DNA from: Octopus sinensis
Lineage: Eukaryota
Direction of reading: 5' to 3'
NCBI RefSeq assembly: GCF_006345805.1
Contig: NC_043020.1
Span: 30,752,001-30,816,000 of the forward strand
DNA: 64,000 nt
Part shown: positions 20,261 through 56,568 of the stretch, piece after piece
Position numbering within the stretch: the first letter of the stretch is position 1
Layout of the letters: every line of letters begins with the position of its first letter
The notes under the pieces: generated by a model
Told to the model about the DNA's origin: nothing
The model's input: only the letters and a program-made list of their open reading frames with translations
Databases searched by the model: none
Translations under genes and position numbers: made by a program

Positions 20261-20840
20261 AAGCAGGAGGCTGCAAAGTGAACTTCAGAACTACACAGCC
20301 ATGCCTGGGCCTACAGCTTCAGAATCACATGGTGAACGGAACAGGAAAATGCCTAGAAACCCTGATTTCGTCCTTCCTTCTGGTTTAAACATTGCCGAGT
20401 TGTTCTTCTTAGAGGTTATTATTGTTGTTGTTTCTATGTGAAAGCAGTGAAGGCACATAGCTAATGGTTGAGGCATTCGGCTCACAATCAAAGATCAGGA
20501 GTTCAATTCCCGGGAACATGTTGTATCCTTGAGCAAGACACTTTACTTCACTCAGCTGCCAAAAATGAATTATACCTGTAATTGAAAGGGTCAGCCTTGT
20601 CACATTCTGTGTTGATACTGAATCTCCCTGAGAACTAGCTTAAGGGTACAAGTGTCTGTGAAGTGCTCAGTCACATGAGCAAGCTGACTGTTGAGAGTTG
20701 ATCAAATCAGCTGGAACCCTCGTTGTCATTAGCAACGACGACAGAGTGCCGTGTGTACAAAGCCATTTACAGATGATTTCTACTACAAGAGAAAGAGGGG
20801 GAGAAGGCAGAGGAGGGGGAGAGAGACGTGTGAAAGTTAC

Positions 20841-20981
20841 CTTTAAGGTGCAGCTGTCTTCTGTTAAACACCTGCTGCTCCACAGCAGCATGGTTCATTG
20901 CAACCATCATTTGCTTGTCTGTCACGTTGAGTAGCTTGGAGTAGTCTTCTGCCGTCAGAAATGCAGCCAGGCTTTCACTGA
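20841..20981 (-). CDS. CEP126: CEP126-like exon 8 (VSESLAAFLTAEDYSKLLNVTDKQMMVAMN...QLHLK)
   Basis: Acceptor after a (CT)n tract, donor GTAACT, phase 1-1; resembles recalled CEP126 VSDSTSEFLMAENL...EDEILTVLN. Confidence 0.88.
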
Positions 20982-21002
20982 CTGAAATTGGGTTAGAAAG
21001 GC

Positions 21003-28106: not shown

Positions 28107-28376
28107 AGACAAACCAAAAATGCTATGGAAATGACCTTTAAATAAAGGGAAAAAACCCAAAGGGGAGAAAGTAAAAAACGCTCACAGAATTTGCGTATGC
28201 GCGCATGTACATATGTATACATGCATGCATACACACCCACGTACATATGCCTCTATGCTCACTCACACTCGTGTGAAACACATGCATGCACACACACACA
28301 CCTATATGTGCACATATATATGCAACCCTACACATGTATACATATACATACTTGCGTACACACGTTTATATACGCA

Positions 28377-29012
28377 TGAGAGAGAATCGTGATGTGGTAG
28401 GAGAGAAGTGTGTTCGCATGGAAGATGGTTCACTTGCACTAAATGGGGATGCAAAGAGAGAGGTTTGGAGATGCCACTATGAAAGGTTGCTGAATAAAGA
28501 AAGTGAATGGGATAAAGAGAGTCTGCCGAATGTTGACCCAACAGAGGGACCAGCTATCCGAGTTGATAGTTCCGTGGTAGCTAAGGCAATTAGAAGCATG
28601 AAGACAGGGAAAGCCCCAGGCCCATCAGGAATCACTGCAGAGATGCTCAAAATGTCTGGTAGTGTCGGCTATAGCCTAGTCACCCGTATAGTTAATCAGG
28701 TGATTCACAAAGGAGTCATACCCAATGACTGGTGTAGCAGCATAATAGTCAACTGCTACAAAGGTAAAGGTGACGCCCTAGATACAAATAACTACAGAGG
28801 TATCAAGCTGTTGGATCAGGTGATGAAGGTTACGGAGAGGGTCATAGCCCAACTAATTAGAGAGAGAGTTAGTTTAGATGAGATGCAGTTTGGGTTTGTG
28901 CCAGGGAAAAGTACTACTGATGCTATATTCCTGGTAAGGCAGCTGCAGGAGAAATACCTAGCCAAAGATAAGCCCCTGTACCTGGCTTTTGTTGACATGG
29001 AGAAAGCCTTTT
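28377..29012 (+). mobile_element. RTE-clade LINE internal fragment (linker and N-terminal part of RT), uninterrupted ORF
   Basis: ORF 28286-29038 contains KAPGPSGITAEMLK, YKGKGD...NYRGIKLL, QFGFVPGKSTTDAIF and LYLAFVDMEKAF. Confidence 0.93.
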
Positions 29013-29194
29013 GTAGTCTACGTTGGTTTCATAAATGATGGTCTCAGACATGCAAGCTCTGTTTAGCTGGCACAAATTTTTATCCCTGCATGAACAGCTG
29101 GTTTCATTTTGTTGTTTTTGTGTGTTGTGTGCAATTGTGTTTTAAAAATTAATAGCACTTTTGTTTGTCTTAATAACGCTCCTTTACATAGTAA

Positions 29195-35399: not shown

Positions 35400-36620
35400 T
35401 ATCATCATCATCATCATCATCGTTTAACGTCCACTTTCCATGCTAGCATGGGTTGGACGGTTCAACGGGAGTCTGGGAAGCCCGAAGGTTGCACCAGGCC
35501 AGTCAGATCTGGCAGTGTTTCTACAGCTGGATGCCCTTCCTAACGCCAACCACTCCGTGAGTGTAGTGGGTGCTTTTTATGCGCTACTGACACAGGTGCC
35601 AGATGAGGCTAGCGAATAGCTACGCTTGGATGGTGCTTTTTACGTGCCACCAGCACGGAAGCCAGGCGAGGCTGGCAATGGCCACGATCAGATGGTGTTT
35701 TTAACGTGCCACCGGCATGGAGGCCAGTCGATGCGGTGCTGGCTACGGCCACGTTCGTATGGTTCTCTTATGTGCCGCCGGCACTGGTATCACAACTACA
35801 AATTCCATTGAAGTTGATCGATTTTGATTTTGATTTTCACTTGCCTCAACAGGTCTTCACAAGTAGAGTTATGTGTCCCAAGAAGGAAGGTATGCACAGG
35901 TGGACTGACTACGTCCCAGGTAGAGGCCATGGGTTATGGCCTCACTTGTCCTGCCGGGTCTTCTCATGCACAGCATACTTCCAAAGGTCTCGGTCTCTGG
36001 TCATTTCCTCGGTGAGACCTAAAGAGCGAAGGTCGTGCTTCACCATCTTGTCCCAGGTTTTCCTGGGTCTACCTCTTTCACAGGTTCCCTCAACCGCTAG
36101 GGTGTGGCACTTTTTCACACAACTATCTTCACCCATTCTTACCACATGTCCATACCAGCGTAGTCATCTCTCTTGCACACCACATCTGATGCTTCTTAGG
36201 TCCAACTTTTCTCTCAAGGCACTTACACTCTGTTGAGTATGAACACTGACATTACACATCCATCGGAGCATACTGGCTTCATTTCTTGCAAGCTTACGCA
36301 TATCCTCAGCAGTCACGGCCCATGTTTCACTGCCATGTAGCATGGCTGTTCGTACACATGCGTCATACAGTCTGCCTTTTACTCTGAGCGAGAGTCCTTT
36401 TGTCACCAGCAGAGGTAAGAGCTGAACTTTGCCCAGGCTATTCTTACTCTAGCAGTTACACTTTCAGCACACCTGCCCCCGCTACTGACTTGATCACCTA
36501 GGTAACGGAAACTATCAACTATTTCTAGTTTTTCTCCCTTGAATGTGGCAGAAGATGGTCTCTGCGCATTTTCAGTGTTTATTGCACCAGAGCATCTGCC
36601 ACATACAAAAACTATCATCC
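35400..36620 (-). mobile_element. RTE LINE 3' portion
   Basis: ORF remnants GLSLRVKGRLYDACVRTAMLHGSETW and GRPRKTWDKMVKHDL, with a (CAT)n tail at 35400. Confidence 0.88.
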
Positions 36621-36634
36621 TAGTTAGCCTTATA

Positions 36635-38000
36635 TATATATATATCTGTAGAAAAGGCATTGGTAGAAACTCTATAAGATGTACCCAGTGTAAGCTATGG
36701 ACACATAAGAAGTGCAGCAATATCAAAAGAAGGCTAACTGGGAAGATAGTTTTAGTATGTGGCAGATGCTCAGGAGCAATACAAACTGAAAATGTGCAGA
36801 GAACAACTTATGCCACATCCCAGGGAGAAAAACTAGAAGCAGTTGATAGCTTCCATTACCTAGGTGACCAAGTCAGTAGCAGGGGTGGGTGCACTGAAAG
36901 TGTAGCTGCTAGAACAAGAATAGCCTGGACAAAGCTCAGAGAGGTCTTACCTCTGCTGGTGACAAAGGGCATGTCACTCTGAGTAAAAGGTAGACTGTAC
37001 GACGCATGCGTACTAACAGCCATGCTACACAGCAGTGAAACATGGGCTGTGACTGATGAGGACATGCGTAAGTTCGTGAGGAATGAAGCCACTATTCTCC
37101 GTTGGATGTGTAATGTCAGTGTGCATACTCGACAGAGTGTAAGTACCTTGAGAGAAAAGTTGGACCCAAGAAGCATCAGATGTGGTGTGCAAGAGAGACG
37201 ACTGCGCTGGTATGGTCACATGGTGAGAATAGATGAGGATAGCTGTGTGAAGAAGTGCCCTACACTAGCAGTTGAGGGACCCCGTGGAAGAGGTAGAGCC
37301 AGGAAGACCTGGGATGAAGTGATGAAGCACGACCTTCAAACATTAGGCCTCACCAAGGAAATGACTAGTGACCGAGACTTTTGGAAATATGCTGTGCTCG
37401 AGAAGACCCGGCAAGCCAAATGAGACCATAACCTTGTGGCCAATGCCAGGAGCGTAACCAGCCCACTTATGCATACCTTTCCTTCATTGGACACTAAACT
37501 CTGCTTGCGAAGACCTGTTGAGGCAAGTGAAATTGAAATCAAAATCAAATTTGATGACTGGCATCCGTGCTAGTGGAACGCTAAGAGCACCATCCAAGCA
37601 TGATTATTGCCAGAGCAGCTGACTGGCTTCCGTGCCAGTGGCATGTAAAAAGCACCATTCAAACATGTTCGTTACCGATGTTGCCTTACTGGCATGTGAA
37701 AAAATATTCGAGCGAGGTTGTTGCCAGTGCCACTGGACTGGCTCCTATGCAGATGACATGTAAAAAACACCATTTGAGCATGGCCGTTGCCAGTACCGCC
37801 TGACTGGCCCCCGTGCTGGTGGCACGTAAAAGTACCCACAACACTCTTGGAGTGGTTGGTGTTAGGAAGGGCATCCAGCTGTAGAAACTCTGCCAGATCA
37901 AGATTGAAGCCTGCTGCAGCCATCTTGTTTGCCAGTCCTCAGTCAAATTGTCCAGCCCATGACAACATGGAAAGTGGACGTTAAACGATGATGATGATGC
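36635..38000 (+). mobile_element. RTE LINE 3' portion, head-to-head with the previous copy across a (TA)n
   Basis: ORFs 36539-36982 and 37022-37423 (CTQCKLWTHKKC, YLGDQVSS, RRLRWYGHMVR), then the 3'UTR and tail. Confidence 0.9.
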
Positions 38001-39818: not shown

Positions 39819-41697
39819 CTGCAGCAGACAAGAAAGAAAAAGACCATTAATCATTCAATGTTAAATTCTTGGTGTTAGTCTTAAGCACCTAATCCGTAGC
39901 CTTAGCAGGGTATCTAATTAAAGAACCCCCTCTAATATGAGACAGGATGTTTGTGTGCCAATAGGGTGTCAGTCAACTGATCAAAGGTTCCTTTCATTGT
40001 TACCACATTATATGACTGTCTTTTATCTTTCACTTGTTTCAGCTATTAGATTGTGGCCATGCTGGGGCAGCACTGCCTTGAAGAATTTTCTTCAAACAAA
40101 TTGATGCAGGACTGCTTTTTGTTCGAAAGCCTGATATTTATTCTGTCAGTCACTTTTGCTGCTCTGGAGATGTCAATCGGTGGTGATGGGCAAACATAGA
40201 CAGAACCCCACCACACACACACACACACAACAGGCTTCTTTGAGTTTCTGTCTACTAAATCCACTAGCAAGGCTTTAGTCAGCCCAAGTCTATAGTAGAA
40301 GACACTTGCTCAAGGTGCCATGCAATGGAACTGAACCTGGAACTACATGGTCGGGAAGTGAACTTCTTACCACACAGCTACACCTCTATGGACATTATGT
40401 TAGTAAAATATGTCTGCAATCAAAAATCAACAGCTGAATTCCCCTAGCTTGAAGTAATTCCTACAAAACAGTTCCCCTTTGTAAGTAACAGCAGCACTGA
40501 GACCTCTATGAACATTCACCTGCTCTCATGAATAGCATGAACATAACAAATTTACATTTCTATATTTGTTCCAGCTCTGTGTCCTGTGTTCAAACCTTGC
40601 TATGGCCTACTTAAAGAGTACACTACTTCATTCCCTGGTTTAGTATTACCACCAGACTCTTTGAGTTCCTTTAGCAAAGGCTTCTCTGTAACAAGCACTC
40701 ACAGTAGATTTCTTACTTAAGGACACCTTCCTCTCATATTCACTCCCTTTCATCAATAAAAGCCACAGGTACAACCCTTTCCTCCTGACTAAATATTTAG
40801 GTCTGTCATGAGCCCCAAGGACTCATAAATAGCCAGAGCTTAACCTAGTTTCAAAGGCATATAACTGTCTGGGGATATAACTTCCCCTACTGAACAGGAC
40901 ATTGGTTCATTGCAGGTTAAACTTTGCAGCTGAGTGGAATGGAACAATGTGAATGCAGCAGCTGGTCCAGGAATCAAAACTACAATTTTATGATTGTGAG
41001 TACCCACACTCTAACCACTAAGCCATGCAATTTTATGCTCACTAAATGATAAAAGTCAGAGCTGCAGGAGTGGCTGTGTGGGAAGAAGCTTGCTTCCCAA
41101 CCACATGTGTTCTGGGTTCAGTCCCACTGCAGGGAGCACTTTGGGCAAGTGTCTTCTGCCATAGCCTTGAGCTGACCAAAGCCTTGGCAGTGGATTTGGT
41201 AGATGCAAACTGAAAGAAGTCCATTGTATACACACACACACACGATGGTGCATAGCCTAATGGTTAGGCTGTTGCACTCATGATCACTAGACTGTGGGTT
41301 CGATTCCCCAATTGGGTGGCATGTTGTGTTCTTGAGCAAAACACTTCATTTCACATTGCTCCTGTACTCCTTCGATCAGGGAGGATTCCTGGCCTACTCA
41401 CCTAGCCGGCAGGGTGGTGCCATTTGAAGGCTAAAACAATGCAAAAACACATTGTGACCAGTGATGTGTAACAACATCTGATAGCCTGGTTGGTCACGTG
41501 ATTATATATGAAACGAGTAAAAAAGAAAAGATAGCAATTTATCACTGCTTAAGCTTAAATCCCTACTCTTAATCCTAAGTGGTTATTTACTCTTTCATAA
41601 TTTTAAGTATCTCTTTACCCTCAGTAGAATAACAAACCAATGACTTATAGCAATGAAAGATTTCAAAAAATATCAGTTAAGGAAACGATCAGTTTAC

Positions 41698-41837
41698 CTT
41701 TTCTGATCCGACTTTGAAGCGGTGCCCTCTGAAACCGTTCTGTTGCCTGTTGCTGCAATAATCGCCGGTGCAATAAAATTTCTTGTCGTCGTTTCTCCTC
41801 TCTTTGACTCTCTTGCTTCCTTCGTAGAGCTAGAACT
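41698..41837 (-). CDS. CEP126: CEP126-like exon 3 (VLALRRKQESQREEKRRQEILLHRRLLQQQATERFQRAPLQSRIRK)
   Basis: AG/GTAAA boundaries; phase 2 to 1; coiled coil resembling CEP126 REQILQQRKQKFEEVTEKFQRA (K1377 region). Confidence 0.92.
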
Positions 41838-49945: not shown

Positions 49946-50098
49946 TTTCTCCTTTTGTTTGTTTCTTGAGAGAGGCGCCTGGCTTTCCCTATGTTGTTGG
50001 CCGTTTCTTCATTGTTGCGGTTAACACAATCCTCATAGGAAGCATTCAGGAGCTTCAGTTTTTCAATCTGGTATTCTTGTAGTTTGCGAAACCGTTTC
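49946..50098 (-). CDS. CEP126: CEP126-like exon 2 (KRFRKLQEYQIEKLKLL...KARRLSQETNKRRK)
   Basis: Acceptor TTTTACTAG, donor GTAAGT; phase 2-2; ARRLSQETNKRRK resembles CEP126 ARKYFVESNRRKK. Confidence 0.9.
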
Positions 50099-52789
50099 CT
50101 AGTAAAACTTTCAGGATTAATAACTGTCTGGGGATGTGTTTGAGGGAATTTGGGACTAAGATGTTTTGGTGTGGTAGCAGAATCATTACTATACTGGGCA
50201 AAATACTTAGCAGTATTTTGTCTGTCCTTATGTTCTGAGTTCCAATTTGCCTTTCATTTTTTGAGGTCAGTAAAATAAAGAACGGTTAAGGACTGGGGAT
50301 CAATGTAATCAACTGAACTATTCCTGGAGTAAGAGTATAAAAAACAGCACACCTCTGTCAAGCCAGTGTGTCAGAGTAGGCTCATCAAACCAGTATGATC
50401 TCAAGCTCAAATTCACAGCCTCCACATCAGACTGTGGCTGGTGAAGAGAAACATGCTGATGTCTTTGTCCTGCAACGGACTGAACATGGGCAATCCAATC
50501 CAACAGGTGCAGATATGATTGTATGTTGAAGAAGTTCACTTCACAAACACAATTTCAGGTTCATTACCATAACACAACATCTTGGGGAAGTGTCTGTCAC
50601 TATAGCCCCAGGCTAACCCAAAACTTGTGAGTGAATTGTGTAGACAAAAACTGAAAGAAGCACACTCTGTGTGTATGTGAGTGTGTGTGTGTGTGTGTGT
50701 ATGTGTGCACACACCCTTATCTTGGCATGGTGCAGTTATTGTAAACAAACATCACCATCATACAAGTAGTAACATTTGCCTGCAATCTTCTCTTGTATGA
50801 AAAAATGTGAGAGTTAGTGGCAGGAAAAATATCTGGGCATAAAAAATTCCACCTCAGCAAATATTGTCTGGTTATGCAAGCATGGAAAAGTAGATGGGAT
50901 GAGGATGATTTGCCTGCCACTTTTTATCTGAAGATAAAGAGAAAAAAAAAAAACATTGGATAGTCAGGACAAGAAAGCCTTCATAAATTTGCTGTTCAAT
51001 CAGGTCTGACCTGAAGCTAAGCAACAACTTGACAATTGATTCAGCAACTGTACCAACAAATGAAATGTCCATGCAATCATGAAAATGCTAAAACAAGCCA
51101 ATGAAGATGTCTTTATATGGTTGCTTAACTGTTAGAAATAGCAGGTAATATTTCTTCAGATTACATTATGCTGTCTTTGACAAAAGACATATTGGATGAA
51201 ATAGTTTGACATATATTGTGTCTGGACAGAAAGGAAAAAAAAATTGATATGGCCAAGGCTGGGGCCTTTCAAGAAAGATCTGCTTGATGGAGGCAGAGTT
51301 GGAATTAATAAGAACAATGCGGATATGTGCTTAAGGGTTTATACATAGTGTCAAATATATTTTGCAATAAATATGGTGAGTTTTACATCAGAAGTCACTG
51401 TAAGCAAACAGCACATTCACATTTTGCTTACAAGTTTTTAAAGTTTACTATGGTTGTTTCTACAACTAGATGTGTGGTTGCAAAGAGTCCAAAATGACAC
51501 AATGAGATCAATGATAAAATAAGATACAGGTGTTTAGATTGGACTGGATATGTCCTCAAACGAGATCAAGAAAGTAATTATATGGTAGCAGAAAAGTGAC
51601 ATCCTGAGGGGAAAAGTGTAGCAGGGCAGCCTAAAGCCACATGGTGAAGGACCATTGACAAGGAAAGGAGATGAGAAGAGTGGAGAAGCTGGAATGAGAC
51701 CAGAACACAGAAAACAGAGCTGGTTGGAGAGATTGTGATGTGGCATTATGGACCTCATGACACATTGAGAACTAACACCAACTACAGCATACATTTCTTT
51801 GTCAAACCAGTACTAGGTAGGCTGTCATGTAGTCATCTTCACTAAAGAATCCTCTGTACTCTATGCTACCTCCTACTATTCTCCCAAACAGAAAGTACTG
51901 GATGCATTTCATCATGGCACCATTATTATTCATCCTTCAATGTGGTTGAACAACCAATCCCAACCAACCAGGATTCTCAGTATTGACTTGTACTCTTCAT
52001 CGTTTTTGAATACAAAATGTGGTTTGTAAGACGTCCGTTGGGGTGATTTTCCTGAGTCCCTATCTCAGCCTTGTACACCAAACCATCGCAAGGTTACTCA
52101 TTTATAGCTAAGTGGACTGGAGCAATGAGAACTGAAGTGTTTTACTCAAGGACACAACAATGCACAGCCAGTCTGGGAATTGAAACCATGATCTCGTGAC
52201 TATGGGTGCAACATCATAACCATTAGGCTTCAGTAAGTAATACTAACACTGGCTTTCTAAAACAATTTTTACAGTGATTGATGTAATCAACATTAGAGTT
52301 TAAAATAGATAGGCAGAATGAAAGAGAGAGGCAGATGGAGACAAACAGGTAGGTATGTAGATATATAGACAGGTAGAGAGAGAGAGAGAGAGAGAGGGAT
52401 TAATCGATAGATACATATAAATGGATGGATAGATAAAATGCTGAGCAAATAAAGCGCATACAGTTCGATAAAGATAGAAAATTAAACAGTGGAAGATAGA
52501 CGGATATATATTTCAATACCATATTGCCAACACAACGTTGAAAACTCTCAGGTGACAGACAGTGAAAACCTTAACAGAAAGAGATACTGTGGGACAAAGC
52601 TCTCTATTCGGTTAAAACCATTTTCACAAAATTTTAAATTTCCGCCTCAACACTCCCATCCTGCTGTCTAAAAGGGAAAATGAACGGTTTGTGTGTGCGA
52701 AGGAACAGAGAAAATATGCTAGAAATAGCAGCCAAATCTCACAAAACTGCGATAACATAATGAAAGCAATATGTAATGAATCTACTCAC

Positions 52790-52887
52790 CTTTCTGCAAA
52801 GGTTTCTTTCAGAGTAATTTCCCGCATTAATATGACAAAGTGAAATGAAAGTGTTAATTTATTTTTGACAACCGAAACCTCCGCCAT
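52790..52887 (-). CDS. CEP126: Predicted first coding exon of CEP126-like gene (MAEVSVVKNKLTLSFHFVILMREITLKETFAER)
   Basis: CAC-ATG-GCG start, open 98 nt, perfect donor AAG|GTGAGT; phase 2 joins exon 2 in frame. Lies inside an inverted-repeat arm. Confidence 0.65.
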
Positions 52888-53034
52888 GTGCGCCGCTGGA
52901 ATAAACTTTCCTATCGCCCGATGATCCAGTCATGATATACTTCAACCGTCTTTTGATTCGGGACCAATAGACCTTAACTGTGTGTTTTAAAAGATACTAA
53001 TTAAAACAATTTTTGTGTATAGTCTTCCGTGTTT

Positions 53035-53803
53035 TCAGGAACCTGGATATAATGTTGCAGCCTCCACAAGAAACTTATGAACTCGCTGGGTTGGTGGTGA
53101 AACAGCTCCTAGGAAAAGGAACCGAGCGACGTACTGCCTCAGGTATTCGGGCCTCCTTCCAGATAGTGAACCACAGTCAGGCTGTTGAGGTTACTATAGG
53201 CCCGCCAACAGTCAGTATAAATAATTGAGCCATGCCTGATGTAACGGGTAATAAATGCAAAGTCCCGGCATCTCGTCCGTCGGCCTCACCAGATTCGTTT
53301 AGCAGTGGAACCATAAAAGCCGTCCTACTTTTCCGTTCCAGTCCGCCAAAAACCCAAACCGTTTTCAGTCCTGCCGCATTGGTATTTCGACGGACCAAAA
53401 CCGTCTCATCAACTTCTTCTTCAATCCCCCACCCCCCGGTCCTCCGATAACAGTTTCGTGTTTTTTGCCCCAAACTGGCAGACCTCCAATCTACGGACGT
53501 TTTACGGCAGAATCCGAGGTTTTCCCCAATTAATGTGTGCGACCAAGCTGTGCTGAGGAAATGGTTGATAAAAAGCAAAACTGTCGTAGGCGGAAGATGG
53601 ACGCCTTCCAGAAAGGTGCCCTTAAATGTAGATATGGAATATCCACATTCCCTTTTCGACTGTCCACGTCGTCGCATCACCTTATGGCAGCAAAATGCAC
53701 GGGACATCGCAGTTCGGACAATCTCGTGTACGCGACAGGAGGCCGTGTTCGGATAAAAATGCGGTAAAATTTCAATAATGTTGCAAGAGTTACAAAGTGC
53801 CAT
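53035..53803 (-). mobile_element. Merlin-superfamily (IS1016/IS1595, ISXO2-like) transposase remnant
   Basis: GGWGIEEEVDET...VWVFGGLERKSRTAFMVP, then frameshifted GSIIYTDCWRAY and YLRQYVARFLF...FLVEAATLYP. The region of the third catalytic residue appears deleted. Confidence 0.88.
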
Positions 53804-54240
53804 GCAGTTGTATGAAGGTGTAAATTAAATGAGAATAAATATTAGTGTAATTCTTTCACTTGTAGTGTGGAAGGGCACTATTTCGTTTGGCGGAGACGTA
53901 AATGGACCCCTCCACCCCTTTAGAAAAAAAATTGTTTTTTCGTCTATGGAGATTCTGATTCTGAGAAAATATTGTTTGTAAAATTTGAATTTTACAAAAA
54001 AAAAAAAAAAAAAATTACCCCGACCCCTTCACTTGCACAAACTACATTGAGACCCATAGGTCCCGAATCAAAAGACGGTTGTAGTCTATCGCTGGATCAT
54101 CGGACGATATGAAATGGTCTGGCGTCGACGAATCTATTTCGAGAAATGTATGGATTTACGGCGAAGAAAGATTTCCAGAAGTTCTATACATTTCTCAAAC
54201 ACATTGCCGAAGTTTATTCCCACTAAATTCCAACTCCGTA

Positions 54241-54425
54241 CCTGGCGGAGGTTTCGGTTGTAAAAAAAAAAAAAAGAATTAACATTTTCATTTCACTTTG
54301 CGGGAAATTACTCTGAAAGAAACCTTTGCAGAAAGGTGAGTAGATTCATAACCTATTTTTGTCATTATGTTATCGCAGTTTTGTGAGATTTGGCTGTTAT
54401 TTCTAGCATATTTTCTCCGTTCCTT
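54241..54425 (+). pseudogene. Inverted, degraded copy of the predicted CEP126 exon 1 plus about 90 bp of intron
   Basis: Reverse complement of 52700-52885; ATG changed to CTG, poly-A expansion, 11-nt deletion; donor AAG|GTGAGT retained. Confidence 0.7.
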
Positions 54426-55516
54426 TTCAGCGGGATAGACTGGCGAGGGGTTTATGAATCAATTTTGGAGTTTCCTCACAGAAAATTTGAAATGAATTCC
54501 CCACCCATATTCTTAATCTCCATATTTTTCCACGTTGATTGAAAAATAAGTTAAAATTCAAAAATTTGGGGTGGGGAGGGAGAAAATTAAAATTTTGAAA
54601 AAATGGTTTTTGGCAAATTCAGAATCTCCGTCGTCGAAAAATTTTCTTCTTAAAAAAGAAAAATTGACTTTTCGTGCCAGTGCACTTGTAGCTATTAAAC
54701 CTATATTCTTTTACCTGTTTCAGTCGACAGACTGCAGCCAGTCTGGAGTACCTCCTTGAAGGATTTACTCAAACAAATCGACTCCAGTAATAATTTTAAA
54801 GTCTGGTTCTCATTCGACTGGTTTCTTTTTCCGGATCGCTTAGTTACAGGAACGTAAACAAAGCAGCATCGGTGCGGGCAGTAGAAAGATATGTATGTCT
54901 ACCAAATCCACTCAGAAGGCTTAAGTTTGCCAGGGCTATCTAAGTTGCAAGACAGTGGGACTGAACCCGGAACGATGTAACTGGGAAGTAAGCTTCTTAC
55001 TACTGAGCATGTGCTTGTGTGTGTGTGTGTGTGTGAGGTTGAAGAGGGACGGTCTCAGAAGGTGTTGCTTCGTTGACTCCATATGGAAAATGGAAACGAC
55101 AGGAGAGGTGAGATGTTAGAAATGGATGTGAGGGAGCGAGTCGGACATTATTTAGGTTGTGGTCGTGTGAGTGCAAGCTCGTAGGTGAAGTACGTGTTAC
55201 GTGACTATATATATATATATAAATATAGTCAGAGAGAGAGAAAAGCGTTGGGTCGATAAAAAAATACAAGCTTTAAATATTTGAAAGCTTGAAACTGTTA
55301 TGGGGGCGTTGTAGACTGTGTATTGTTGTTATGTTTAGTGTGTATTGTGGTGGAGAGGATCTAAACACAAATTTCTCGATGTTGGTTCTACGGTTGAAGA
55401 TTAAATGAGAGAGAGAGACGAGGCAATCTAGTGGAAACATGGAAAATAACAATAGTTATGAACATTAACACATATTTATCAAAGTGTTTGTGCGTGTGTA
55501 ATGTATACACACACTC

Positions 55517-55573
<57 letters not shown>

Positions 55574-55812
55574 TATGTGTGTATGTACGTATTAAAATAT
55601 ATAAAATATAGGAGAATGATAGAGGGAAAAGAGGAAGAAGATAAAAATGAAAGAGATGAACATGTTCTGTAAAGGATACGAGTAAGCTCCGGCCAACATT
55701 CTGACAAGACTGACCCCTGAAGAGGAGTCTTGGACGATAAGGAATCAGGCGTCAAGTATAAGTCCTAACATCACAAACATTGCTGTTAGGACGCCATATT
55801 GTCTCTGTGCTG

Positions 55813-55826
55813 GCTGCCATGGCAAC
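55813..55826. promoter_or_regulatory. RFX X-box-like motif GCTGCCATGGCAAC
   Basis: One mismatch to the GTTGCCATGGCAAC consensus, in a relatively CpG-richer region about 2.9 kb upstream of the predicted ATG. Confidence 0.45.
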
Positions 55827-56568
55827 AGACGTATACAATTGCAACAATCAACAAGAAGTCAGTGAAAAAGAGAGAAAGAACGAAGCTTAACACCGCCTCT
55901 TTTTCCTTTTCTTTCTATTACTACCACCGCCGCCATCACTACAGCTAAGAATAATTATTATTGTTTGAGTTAATTTTATTGGAATACAATAGGTATGTAT
56001 ATGATACATACCTAACGCAAAACCACATTAAAAATATAAATCCAAAATCGGGAGAAAAAATGGAAAAAGAGGAACAAGGAAAAATAAGGAAAGAAAAGAA
56101 GAAAAACGAAAAAAATAAACATCACTTGAACCCCGAGTGGTGCCTCAATCGATGACACATCTCAAGGTTAACAGAACCTCCTGAAGCAAGCCAACACGCT
56201 CGCAGCATTACCACAGCCAAGCGCCTTCACCGGCACAATAATAATAAGAATAAGAATAATAATTCTTTTTACTATAAGCACAAGGCCTGAAATTTGGGGG
56301 CGGGGGTAAGTCGATTATGCACTGGTGCATAACTGGTATTTAATTTATCGACCCCGAAAGGATGAAAGGCAAAGTCAACCTTAGCAGAATTTGAATTCAG
56401 AACGTAGTGATGTGCGAAATACCACTTTTTCGTTTGGCATGCTAATGATTCTGCCAGCTCGCCGCCTTATATAATAATAATGCTTTCTACTATAGGTACA
56501 AGGCCTGAAGTTTGGCGGGAGGGGCCAGTCAATTAGATCGACCCCAGTACACAATAATCATCGTTTAA

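What the first reader, a model, noticed from the sequence alone, without database searches (positions are those of the whole stretch)
52700..54425. Predicted first coding exon of CEP126 lies in one arm of an inverted repeat enclosing a Merlin transposase; the other arm holds a dead copy
Seen: 52700-52885 is the reverse complement of 54243-54425, and an inner pair links 52913-52970 with 54055-54108. The left arm, read on the minus strand, has ATGGCG, a 98-nt open frame and AAG|GTGAGT, splicing in phase to exon 2 (MAEV...FAER|KRFRKL). The right arm has ATG>CTG, an A-run expansion and an 11-nt deletion. A decayed Merlin transposase sits between them on the gene's strand. Inference: either a transposon TIR was exapted as the start exon, or transposition duplicated and inverted host exon 1. 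The asymmetric decay suggests selection on the left arm only. Transposase-to-CEP126 read-through splicing is also possible.
Basis: partly seen in the sequence, partly recalled or inferred. Interest (0 to 1): 0.8.

Follow-up and report, generated by a model that had tools for sequence, protein, structure and literature searches.

The report
Dead Merlin transposon inside CEP126 intron
The inverted repeat is real, but it is the pair of long end-repeats of a dead Merlin transposon sitting in intron 1 of an octopus CEP126-family gene, whose true, deeply conserved start exon lies 2.8 kb further upstream; one end-repeat carries a perfect splice donor that a sister-species annotation uses as a minor alternative 5' exon.

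Summary
**Observation:** confirmed at the stated coordinates. The arms 52700-52977 and 54047-54425 are inverted copies flanking a frameshifted, internally deleted IS1595/Merlin transposase relic (53038-53803, minus strand). The window is Octopus sinensis CM016882.1.

**Interpretation:** only partly right.
- The gene does belong to the CEP126 (Pfam K1377) family.
- Its first coding exon is MLAGAYS at 55699-55680, not the arm.
  - All RefSeq models of O. sinensis and O. bimaculoides use it, as does the main O. vulgaris model.
  - It lies in a 100-nt block identical between O. sinensis and O. bimaculoides.
  - Its ML-x-G-x-YS motif is the N-terminus of distant homologues.
- The whole repeat therefore lies in intron 1.
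- The arm exon is not imaginary. O. vulgaris isoform CAI9740026.1 starts in the same arm and uses the same AAG|GTGAGT donor, joined to exon 3 (exon 2 skipped).
- The start codon differs in each of three species, and the donor sequence is present in both arms.
- The left arm has changed as fast as the right one, so selection on the left arm only is not supported.

**Verdict:** an ordinary transposon-supplied alternative or cryptic 5' exon, of modest interest. Genome-wide copy number and RNA junction counts could not be tested here.

The parts
52700..52977 (-). Left arm: the downstream (3') long terminal inverted repeat of the Merlin relic, in gene and transposase orientation.
   Evidence: Reverse complement of 54047-54425. 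Present in O. vulgaris (L001 12740-13025) and O. bimaculoides (L003 12889-13481).
52790..52887 (-). The 98-nt ATG-initiated open frame (MAEV...FAE, with R completed by the next exon) ending at the consensus donor AAG|GTGAGT (GT at 52789-52788). It corresponds to the alternative 5' coding exon of O. vulgaris isoform CAI9740026.1.
   Evidence: The donor scores 9/9 against MAG|GTRAGT. The frame is compatible with both exon 2 and exon 3.
52859..52933 (-). Upstream ATG (MTGSSGDRK...). In O. vulgaris it is in frame and is the annotated start. In O. sinensis an 8-nt deletion puts it out of frame, so it forms a short upstream ORF overlapping the MAEV ATG.
53038..53803 (-). Dead Merlin / IS1595-like transposase. 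It is spread over three reading frames, and the segment that includes the third catalytic block is deleted.
   Evidence: Relative to P0003 (O. vulgaris ISXO2-like transposase, PF12762): E = 1.3e-49, 55% identity. tblastn pieces are 53689-53258, 53255-53163 and 53160-53038, in frames -1, -3 and -2, with P0003 residues 185-215 missing. Pfam PF12762 hits the relic itself at E = 4e-4, below threshold.
53804..54046 (-). Non-coding interior of the element upstream of the transposase ORF. It contains an A17 run.
54047..54425 (+). Right arm: the upstream (5') long terminal inverted repeat. It carries an extra 112 nt (54115-54226) that the left arm lacks, plus the same GCAGAAAG|GTGAGTAG motif pointing away from the gene.
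55680..55699 (-). True (canonical) first coding exon: ATGTTGGCCGGAGCTTACTC|gtatcc = MLAGAYS. It lies inside a 100-nt block (55656-55755) identical between O. sinensis and O. bimaculoides.
49946..50098 (-). Exon 2, 153 nt (a multiple of three). It is skipped in the O. vulgaris arm-exon isoform.
41696..41837 (-). Exon 3, the acceptor used by the arm exon in CAI9740026.1.
52601..52656 (.). Weak outer inverted pair with 54568-54623 (75%). A third related copy lies at 53936-53993. This may be an older outer part of the element or an unrelated short dispersed repeat.

Best explanation
A 1.73-kb autonomous-type Merlin (IS1595-related) DNA transposon with long terminal inverted repeats of about 280-380 bp inserted, in sense orientation, into intron 1 (55679-50099) of the octopus CEP126-family gene. 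The insertion predates the split of O. bimaculoides from O. vulgaris and O. sinensis. The element then died through frameshifts and loss of the third catalytic block.

The repeat sequence itself contains GCAGAAAG|GTGAGT, so the downstream repeat presents a perfect 5' splice site in the gene's sense. RNA that begins inside the element, or otherwise includes the arm, can splice from it to exon 2 or exon 3 in frame, because exon 2 is 153 nt. O. vulgaris has such a model, arm to exon 3.

This is a minor, lineage-variable, transposon-supplied alternative 5' exon, and most likely neutral. The gene's real start is the conserved MLAGAYS exon upstream.

Shown here: the structure, homology, gene model, conservation pattern and phase compatibility.

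Inferred:
- The O. vulgaris isoform rests on transcripts.
- The arms are the element's own end-repeats.
- Usage is minor and not selected.
- In canonical pre-mRNA the two arms pair and hide the donor.
For: Locus and species:
- The window is 100% identical to O. sinensis L004 over 6.2 kb.
- The element is present in O. vulgaris at 97.8% colinear identity. In O. bimaculoides the relic and left arm are present; the right arm is hidden by an N-run.

Transposase: homology and decay.

Architecture:
- The layout is compact: repeat, 243 bp, ORF, about 60 bp, repeat.
- A related O. vulgaris Merlin (L002) has the same layout, with arms 5017-5391 / 6865-7123.
- Merlin end-repeats of 24-462 bp are described in PMC8101967.

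Canonical start:
- MLAGAYS at 55699-55680.
- All RefSeq isoforms begin there.
- It lies in a 100-nt perfectly conserved block, against roughly 75-90% identity across the alignable parts of the region.
- Distant homologues all begin ML[ASGTK]G[AGT]YS.

Arm exon:
- P0009 (CAI9740026.1) reads MTGSS...MAEV...FAER|VLALRRK and maps to L001 12784-12936, then to exon 3.
- The annotation pipeline added isoforms by PASA from Iso-Seq and RNA-seq (PMC10700109).
- The donor motif is identical in both arms and in all three species.

No extra constraint on the left arm:
- Unique substitutions are 14 / 16 / 21.
- There are three different ATGs and a frame-shifted middle segment.

Pairing: cofolding of the two arms gives -272 kcal/mol against -82 +/- 4 for shuffles, with the donor fully paired.
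Against: - No 8-9-bp target-site duplication is recognisable at 52700 / 54425 (TGTGCGAA versus TTTTCAGC).
- The repeat ends AAGG..., not GG....
- The arms of the related element L002 are not similar in sequence.
- No reads were seen. The O. vulgaris isoform could be a pipeline product, or the arm could be an internal cassette exon rather than a first exon.
- All three species keep an ATG-initiated open frame of 33-51 codons into the donor, which leaves some room for selection on coding capacity.
Confidence: 0.7

Rival explanations
1. Functional exaptation. The downstream end-repeat has been domesticated as an alternative promoter and first exon. It would give a CEP126 isoform that lacks the conserved MLxGAYS N-terminus (and, in the annotated model, exon 2), and it would be maintained by selection in the O. 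vulgaris / O. sinensis lineage.
For: - An annotated O. vulgaris isoform uses it.
- The donor is a perfect consensus, whereas the canonical exon-1 donor is weak at 4/9.
- All three species retain an ATG-initiated open frame to the donor, while the right arm does not.
Against: - The start codon and the first 15-30 residues differ in each species.
- An 8-nt deletion in O. sinensis turns the O. vulgaris start into an overlapping out-of-frame upstream ORF.
- The substitution rate in the left arm is not lower than in the right arm or the surrounding intron.
- The donor motif is ancestral to both arms.
- RefSeq gives no such isoform in O. sinensis or O. bimaculoides.
Confidence: 0.15
2. The arm exon is never used in vivo. 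The open frame and donor are chance features of the repeat, and the O. vulgaris isoform is an artefact, for example from an unspliced or mis-assembled transcript or an ab initio model.
For: - The open frame is short (33 codons).
- In canonical pre-mRNA the donor would be buried in a stem of about 200 bp.
- The same annotation also carries a 5'-truncated isoform (P0008), which shows that partial transcript models were kept.
- No reads were inspected here.
Against: - The pipeline adds isoforms only through PASA transcript assemblies.
- The model uses a canonical GT-AG junction from a 9/9 donor to the authentic exon-3 acceptor, in frame. Noise is unlikely to produce that.
Confidence: 0.13
3. Transposition duplicated and inverted a host exon 1, so the arms are host sequence rather than transposon end-repeats.
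For: Only two copies of the arm were seen in the DNA available. No target-site duplication was found.
Against: - The real exon 1 (55699-55680) and its conserved surroundings share no similarity with the arms.
- The orthologous N-termini are unrelated to MAEV....
- The arms abut the transposase unit exactly as end-repeats do, and a related Merlin has the same build.
Confidence: 0.02

Closest known systems
Merlin superfamily of DNA transposons (related to bacterial IS1016 / IS1595; Feschotte 2004, as summarised in PMC8101967)
   Same: [quoted passage not shown]
- Long terminal inverted repeats within the described range of 24-462 bp.
- Element size of about 1.7 kb.
- Merlin families are reported in O. 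vulgaris (PMC13282606).
   Different: - No recognisable 8-9-bp target-site duplication.
- The repeat ends AAGG rather than GG.
- The transposase is dead: at least two frameshifts, with the third catalytic block deleted.
- Family copy number is unknown.
Transposon-derived alternative first exons and exonisation of transposon sequence that happens to carry splice sites (general knowledge, e.g. Alu or MITE exonisation, transposon-derived promoters)
   Same: An intronic transposon in sense orientation supplies a consensus 5' splice site and a short open frame, joined in frame to authentic downstream exons. It appears as a minor, lineage-restricted isoform beside a conserved canonical start.
   Different: - The donor lies in the end-repeat of a Merlin DNA transposon in a cephalopod.
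- The transcription start is unknown.
- No evidence of function or selection was found.
Intronic inverted repeats forming long double-stranded RNA (e.g. inverted Alu pairs; substrates of ADAR editing and modulators of splicing; general knowledge)
   Same: Two arms of about 200 nt lie 1.3 kb apart in one intron. They are predicted to pair at -272 kcal/mol, with the cryptic donor inside the stem.
   Different: This is purely a prediction. No editing or splicing data were examined.
CEP126 / KIAA1377 (Pfam K1377, PF15352)
   Same: - A protein of about 1,100-1,200 residues.
- The C-terminal block aligns to the end of the K1377 profile.
- Homologues pass the Pfam threshold.
- The family shares the N-terminal MLxGAYS motif and a coiled-coil region.
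   Different: - The octopus protein itself is below the Pfam threshold (21.7 versus 27 bits).
- RefSeq names it 'probable serine/threonine-protein kinase DDB_G0282963'. That name looks driven by low-complexity sequence.

Membership tests
Merlin superfamily DNA transposon | Transposase with a DDE_Tnp_IS1595 (PF12762) domain | tested here: met
   The relic hits PF12762 at E = 4e-4, below threshold because of decay. It is 55% identical (E = 1.3e-49) to O. vulgaris P0003, which carries PF12762, and it hits a Periplaneta PF12762 protein.
Merlin superfamily DNA transposon | Terminal inverted repeats of 24-462 bp flanking the transposase | tested here: met
   Arms 52700-52977 and 54047-54425; blastn E = 4.6e-55.
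Merlin superfamily DNA transposon | Repeat termini beginning 5'-GG-3' | tested here: inconclusive
   The shared sequence begins AAGGAAC..., with GG at positions 3-4. The exact terminus cannot be fixed without other copies.
Merlin superfamily DNA transposon | Target-site duplication of 8 or 9 bp | tested here: not met
   The flanks TGTGCGAA and TTTTCAGC match at 3 of 8 positions. The insertion is old, being shared by three species, so erosion is plausible.
Merlin superfamily DNA transposon | Intact DDE catalytic triad (active element) | tested here: not met
   The segment matching P0003 residues 185-215 (third block) is missing, and there are at least two frameshifts. This is a dead copy.
Merlin superfamily DNA transposon | Dispersed family copies sharing the same end-repeats | not testable with these tools
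   No octopus whole-genome DNA search is available.
CEP126 / K1377 family | Match to Pfam PF15352 above the gathering score | tested here: inconclusive
   The octopus C-terminus scores 21.7 bits against a cut-off of 27, but it aligns to profile positions 909-982 of 983. Homologues found with P0001 (E down to 1e-38) score 28-61 bits.
CEP126 / K1377 family | Family-typical N-terminus | tested here: met
   MLAGAYSKRF... aligns from residue 1 with the ML[ASGTK]G[AGT]YS N-termini of distant homologues. The arm-encoded MAEV... peptide does not.
Transposon-derived alternative first exon (exaptation) | A splice junction from transposon sequence to an authentic host exon | tested here: met
   The annotated O. 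vulgaris isoform CAI9740026.1 maps to the arm and then to exon 3. No reads were inspected.
Transposon-derived alternative first exon (exaptation) | Transcription start inside the transposon | not testable with these tools
   No 5'-end or UTR data are available.
Transposon-derived alternative first exon (exaptation) | Purifying selection on the exonised sequence | tested here: not met
   - Unique substitutions are 14 (O. sinensis left), 16 (O. bimaculoides left) and 21 (O. sinensis right).
- The ATGs are species-specific and a middle segment is frame-shifted.
- There is an 8-nt indel between O. sinensis and O. vulgaris.

The most novel reading that the evidence does not exclude
The two end-repeats of the Merlin relic form an RNA switch built from a transposon.
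- In transcripts from the canonical promoter, the arms pair into a duplex of about 200 bp. That duplex hides the perfect donor and is a likely ADAR substrate.
- In transcripts that start inside the element, the downstream arm is left single-stranded. It then acts as a first exon.
- The product would be a lineage-specific CEP126 isoform lacking the deeply conserved MLxGAYS N-terminus and the exon-2 segment.
Probability: 0.08. Interest if true: 0.6.

Novelty: new member of a known kind. Interest (0 to 1): 0.27.

Why it matters
The main value is a correction. The gene's real start is the conserved MLAGAYS exon, RefSeq's 'kinase' name hides a CEP126-family gene, and the striking repeat is an ordinary dead transposon.

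If the arm exon proves to be expressed, it would be a clean, datable cephalopod example of a DNA-transposon end-repeat supplying a splice donor and an alternative N-terminus. A built-in double-stranded RNA partner would add interest in animals known for heavy RNA editing.

Tried and rejected
- Protein search with arm exon plus exon 2 (84 aa) found nothing, a limit of the word index. A longer concatenated query worked.
- Pfam on the large exon ORFs and on full-length P0001 and P0002 gave nothing. Only the isolated C-terminus hit K1377.
- Looked for sequence similarity between the arms and the arms of the related Merlin locus L002. None was found beyond the coding region; one 34-nt hit is non-colinear and probably chance.
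- Looked for a target-site duplication at 52700 / 54425, with 8 or 9 bp and with GG-start offsets. None was found.
- Looked for further copies of the arms, or of the outer flanks, in the window and in L001-L003. Only the orthologous copies appeared.
- P0002 has no contig on record. The O. bimaculoides locus was reached through P0012 instead, but its right arm lies in a 1,894-nt N-run.
- Folding the whole element failed because it is too long. It was replaced by a two-arm cofold.
- A transposase-host fusion ORF is rejected: stop codons separate the relic's last frame from the arm's open stretch.
Full report

Yes. The repeat finder reports arms 52700-52826 / 54299-54425 (127 nt, 94% complementary). 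They continue with indels to 52902 / 54227. An inner pair lies at 52907-52977 / 54047-54114. blastn of the left half against the right half gives E = 4.6e-55 and 2.4e-13 for the two pairs.

On the minus strand the left arm reads ATG (52887-52885), then a 98-nt open frame, then AAG|GTGAGT. The right arm has CTG at the ATG position, an expanded A-run and an 11-14-nt deletion. All details in the finding are confirmed.

**2. Where is this?**

Window 56100-49900 is 100% identical to locus L004, which is Octopus sinensis CM016882.1 (GCA_006345805.1). By arithmetic on the reported ranges, the window is CM016882.1:30,752,001-30,816,000.

Orthologous loci were fetched from:
- O. vulgaris: L001, OX597837.1, 97.8% identity and colinear over 12 kb.
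- O. bimaculoides: L003, CM046624.1.

**3. The interior**

The minus-strand translation between the arms is a decayed IS1595/Merlin-type transposase.
- Pfam PF12762 hits it weakly, at E = 4e-4 and below threshold.
- A frame-stitched translation finds an O. vulgaris ISXO2-like transposase (P0003, 271 aa, PF12762) at E = 1.3e-49 and 55% identity. It also finds more distant relatives, including one from Periplaneta.
- tblastn of P0003 places the relic at 53689-53258, 53255-53163 and 53160-53038, in three different frames.
- P0003 residues 185-215, the region of the third catalytic block, are missing. A more distant relative extends the match to the ORF start at 53803. The copy is dead.

**4. The gene and its real first exon**

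A concatenation of exon 2 and the large minus-strand ORFs retrieved an O. vulgaris protein (P0001, 1173 aa) and a second-species protein (P0002). Their cluster members include two O. sinensis and two O. bimaculoides RefSeq isoforms.

tblastn maps the exons onto the window:

| Exon piece | Window coordinates (tblastn hit) |
|---|---|
| exon 2 | 50097-49945 |
| exon 3 | 41839-41696 |
| next | 39819-39298 |
| next | 31683-30232 |
| next | 27304-27143 |
| next | 24029-23064 |
| next | 20985-20839 |
| last | 18531-18457 |

Every RefSeq isoform and the main O. vulgaris model begin MLAGAYS|KRFRKL.... That seven-residue exon is at 55699-55680 (ATGTTGGCCGGAGCTTACTC|gtatcc), found once in the window against none expected by chance. 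Intron 1 is therefore 55679-50099, and the whole inverted-repeat structure (52700-54425) lies inside it.

Evidence that this exon is the true start:
- It sits in a 100-nt block (55755-55656) that is identical between O. sinensis and O. bimaculoides. The checked 80 nt around the ATG are also identical in O. vulgaris. The alignable parts of the surrounding region and intron 1 are roughly 75-90% identical.
- An exhaustive HMMER search with P0001 found 68 relatives. The distant ones (28-46% identity, 1,000-1,400 aa) align from residue 1.
- Of the ten N-termini read, nine begin ML[ASGTK]G[AGT]YS at residue 1. P0014 carries MLAGAYS after a 16-residue extension.

The N-terminus is therefore deeply conserved and unrelated to MAEV...FAER.

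**5. Is it CEP126?**

Full-length P0001 has no Pfam hit. Its C-terminal 104 residues hit K1377 (PF15352, the KIAA1377/CEP126 family) at E = 6.4e-5, aligned to the last 74 profile positions. Five of eight distant homologues pass the K1377 gathering score, at 28-61 bits.

The family assignment is therefore supported through intermediate sequences. RefSeq's name, 'probable serine/threonine-protein kinase DDB_G0282963', is not informative.

**6. The arm exon is nevertheless annotated in the sister species**

One O. vulgaris isoform, CAI9740026.1 (P0009), begins:

MTGSSGDRKLPKFIPAAHMAEVSVVKNKLTLSFHFVILMREITLKETFAER|VLALRRK...

- Its first 51 residues map at 100% to L001 12784-12936, the orthologue of the left arm.
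- The next residues map to exon 3.
- Exon 2 is 153 nt, so the arm exon is in phase with either exon 2 or exon 3.

[quoted passage not shown] That this isoform rests on a transcript assembly is an inference; I saw no reads. I also cannot tell whether the arm is a true first exon or an internal exon of a transcript whose longest ORF happens to start there.

**7. Is the left arm under selection?**

A five-way alignment was made of the left arms of three species and the right arms of two. The O. bimaculoides right arm is hidden by a 1,894-nt N-run.

- **Donor region.** The 50-70 nt around the donor, including GCAGAAAGGTGAGTAGATT, are the same in both arms. The donor is therefore an ancestral property of the repeat, not something evolved after insertion.
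- **Left-arm decay.** The left arm has decayed too.
  - It lacks about 90-112 nt that the right arm has.
  - It lost 11 nt in the O. vulgaris / O. sinensis ancestor.
  - It lost a further 8 nt in O. sinensis alone.
- **Substitutions.** Over 277 shared columns, the unique substitutions are 14 (O. sinensis left), 16 (O. bimaculoides left) and 21 (O. sinensis right, whose branch is longer).
- **O. sinensis versus O. vulgaris.** The left arm differs by the 8-nt indel. The right arm differs by two substitutions.
- **Start codons**.
  - O. vulgaris uses MTGSS (51 aa).
  - In O. sinensis that ATG is out of frame. It forms a short upstream ORF overlapping the MAEV ATG, which opens a 33-aa frame.
  - O. 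bimaculoides lacks both ATGs. It has a third one (MKLPKF..., 46 aa), with a frame-shifted middle segment.

All three species do keep an open frame into the donor and the right arm does not, which leaves a little room for the exaptation view. The peptide itself is not conserved, and the divergence matches that of the neutral intron. 'Selection on the left arm only' is not supported.

**8. End-repeat or duplicated host exon?**

Points favouring the end-repeat reading:
- The arms have no similarity to the real exon 1 or its surroundings.
- They abut the transposase unit compactly: repeat, 243 bp, ORF, about 60 bp, repeat.
- The related O. vulgaris Merlin at L002 has the same build, with arms of about 375 bp (5017-5391 / 6865-7123).
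- Merlin end-repeats of 24-462 bp with 8-9-bp duplications and GG termini are the published definition (PMC8101967).

Points against, or untested:
- No target-site duplication is visible.
- The repeat ends AAGG.
- The arms of L002 are not similar in sequence. The two elements are different families, about 70% identical in coding DNA.
- Genome-wide copy number could not be measured.

A weak outer inverted pair (52601-52656 / 54568-54623), with a third copy inside the element, remains unexplained.

**9. Mechanism proposed**

- A dead Merlin lies in sense orientation in intron 1.
- Its downstream end-repeat offers a 9/9 consensus donor, while the canonical exon-1 donor scores only 4/9.
- RNA that includes the arm without a competing upstream context, most simply RNA that starts inside the element, splices to exon 2 or exon 3 in frame.
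- In canonical pre-mRNA both arms are transcribed. They are predicted to form a duplex of -272 kcal/mol (shuffles -82 +/- 4) in which the donor is fully paired. This would suppress its use and would make a plausible ADAR substrate.

These last two steps are inference only.

**10. Verdict**

| Question | Verdict |
|---|---|
| Observation | confirmed |
| Interpretation | partly supported |
| What it is | a new instance of a well-known phenomenon (a transposon supplying a cryptic or alternative 5' exon), not the gene's first coding exon |
| Interest | low to moderate |

Noticed in passing
window 3495-11631: An 8.1-kb degenerate (TA)n-type microsatellite tract (TRF: period 2, about 4,093 copies, 72% matches). 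It produces the long YIYI/CMCM pseudo-ORFs in all frames.
   Followed up: partly
window 28286-29038 (+) and 36539-37423 (+): Retrotransposon fragments antisense to the CEP126-family gene, inside its introns. The first ORF hits RVT_1 (E = 6.5e-9, above threshold). The second has only a weak PHD-like hit.
   Followed up: partly
window 18457-55699 (-), whole gene: RefSeq names this gene 'probable serine/threonine-protein kinase DDB_G0282963' or 'uncharacterized protein DDB_G0289263'. It has no kinase domain and belongs to the K1377/CEP126 family, so the name looks driven by low-complexity Q/N-rich runs.
   Followed up: yes
window 49946-50098 (-): Exon 2 is exactly 153 nt and is skipped in O. vulgaris isoform CAI9740026.1. 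Exon 1, the arm exon and exon 2 all end in phase 2, so several in-frame 5' combinations are possible.
   Followed up: yes
L003 13117-13420 (O. bimaculoides): A species-specific insertion of about 300 nt sits about 30 nt downstream of the arm's GTGAGT donor. It is absent from O. sinensis and O. vulgaris. Its identity was not determined.
   Followed up: no
window 52601-52656, 53936-53993, 54568-54641: Three copies of a 45-60-nt AT-rich motif (AAAACCATTTT..CAAAATTTTAA..CCC.CCCC), 75-81% alike. Two of them form a weak outer inverted pair around the Merlin relic. This is either an older outer part of the element or a short dispersed repeat.
   Followed up: partly
window 55656-55833 (-): The canonical exon 1 with its 5' flank and the first 24 nt of intron 1 is 96-100% identical between O. 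sinensis and O. bimaculoides, including a 100-nt perfect block. This holds despite a weak donor (CTC|GTATCC, 4/9). It suggests a conserved promoter, 5'UTR or splicing element.
   Followed up: partly
window 20839-20985 (-): The exon encoding NVSESLAAFL...HLKG is absent from O. sinensis isoform X2 (P0010), so it is a second alternatively spliced exon near the conserved C-terminus.
   Followed up: no
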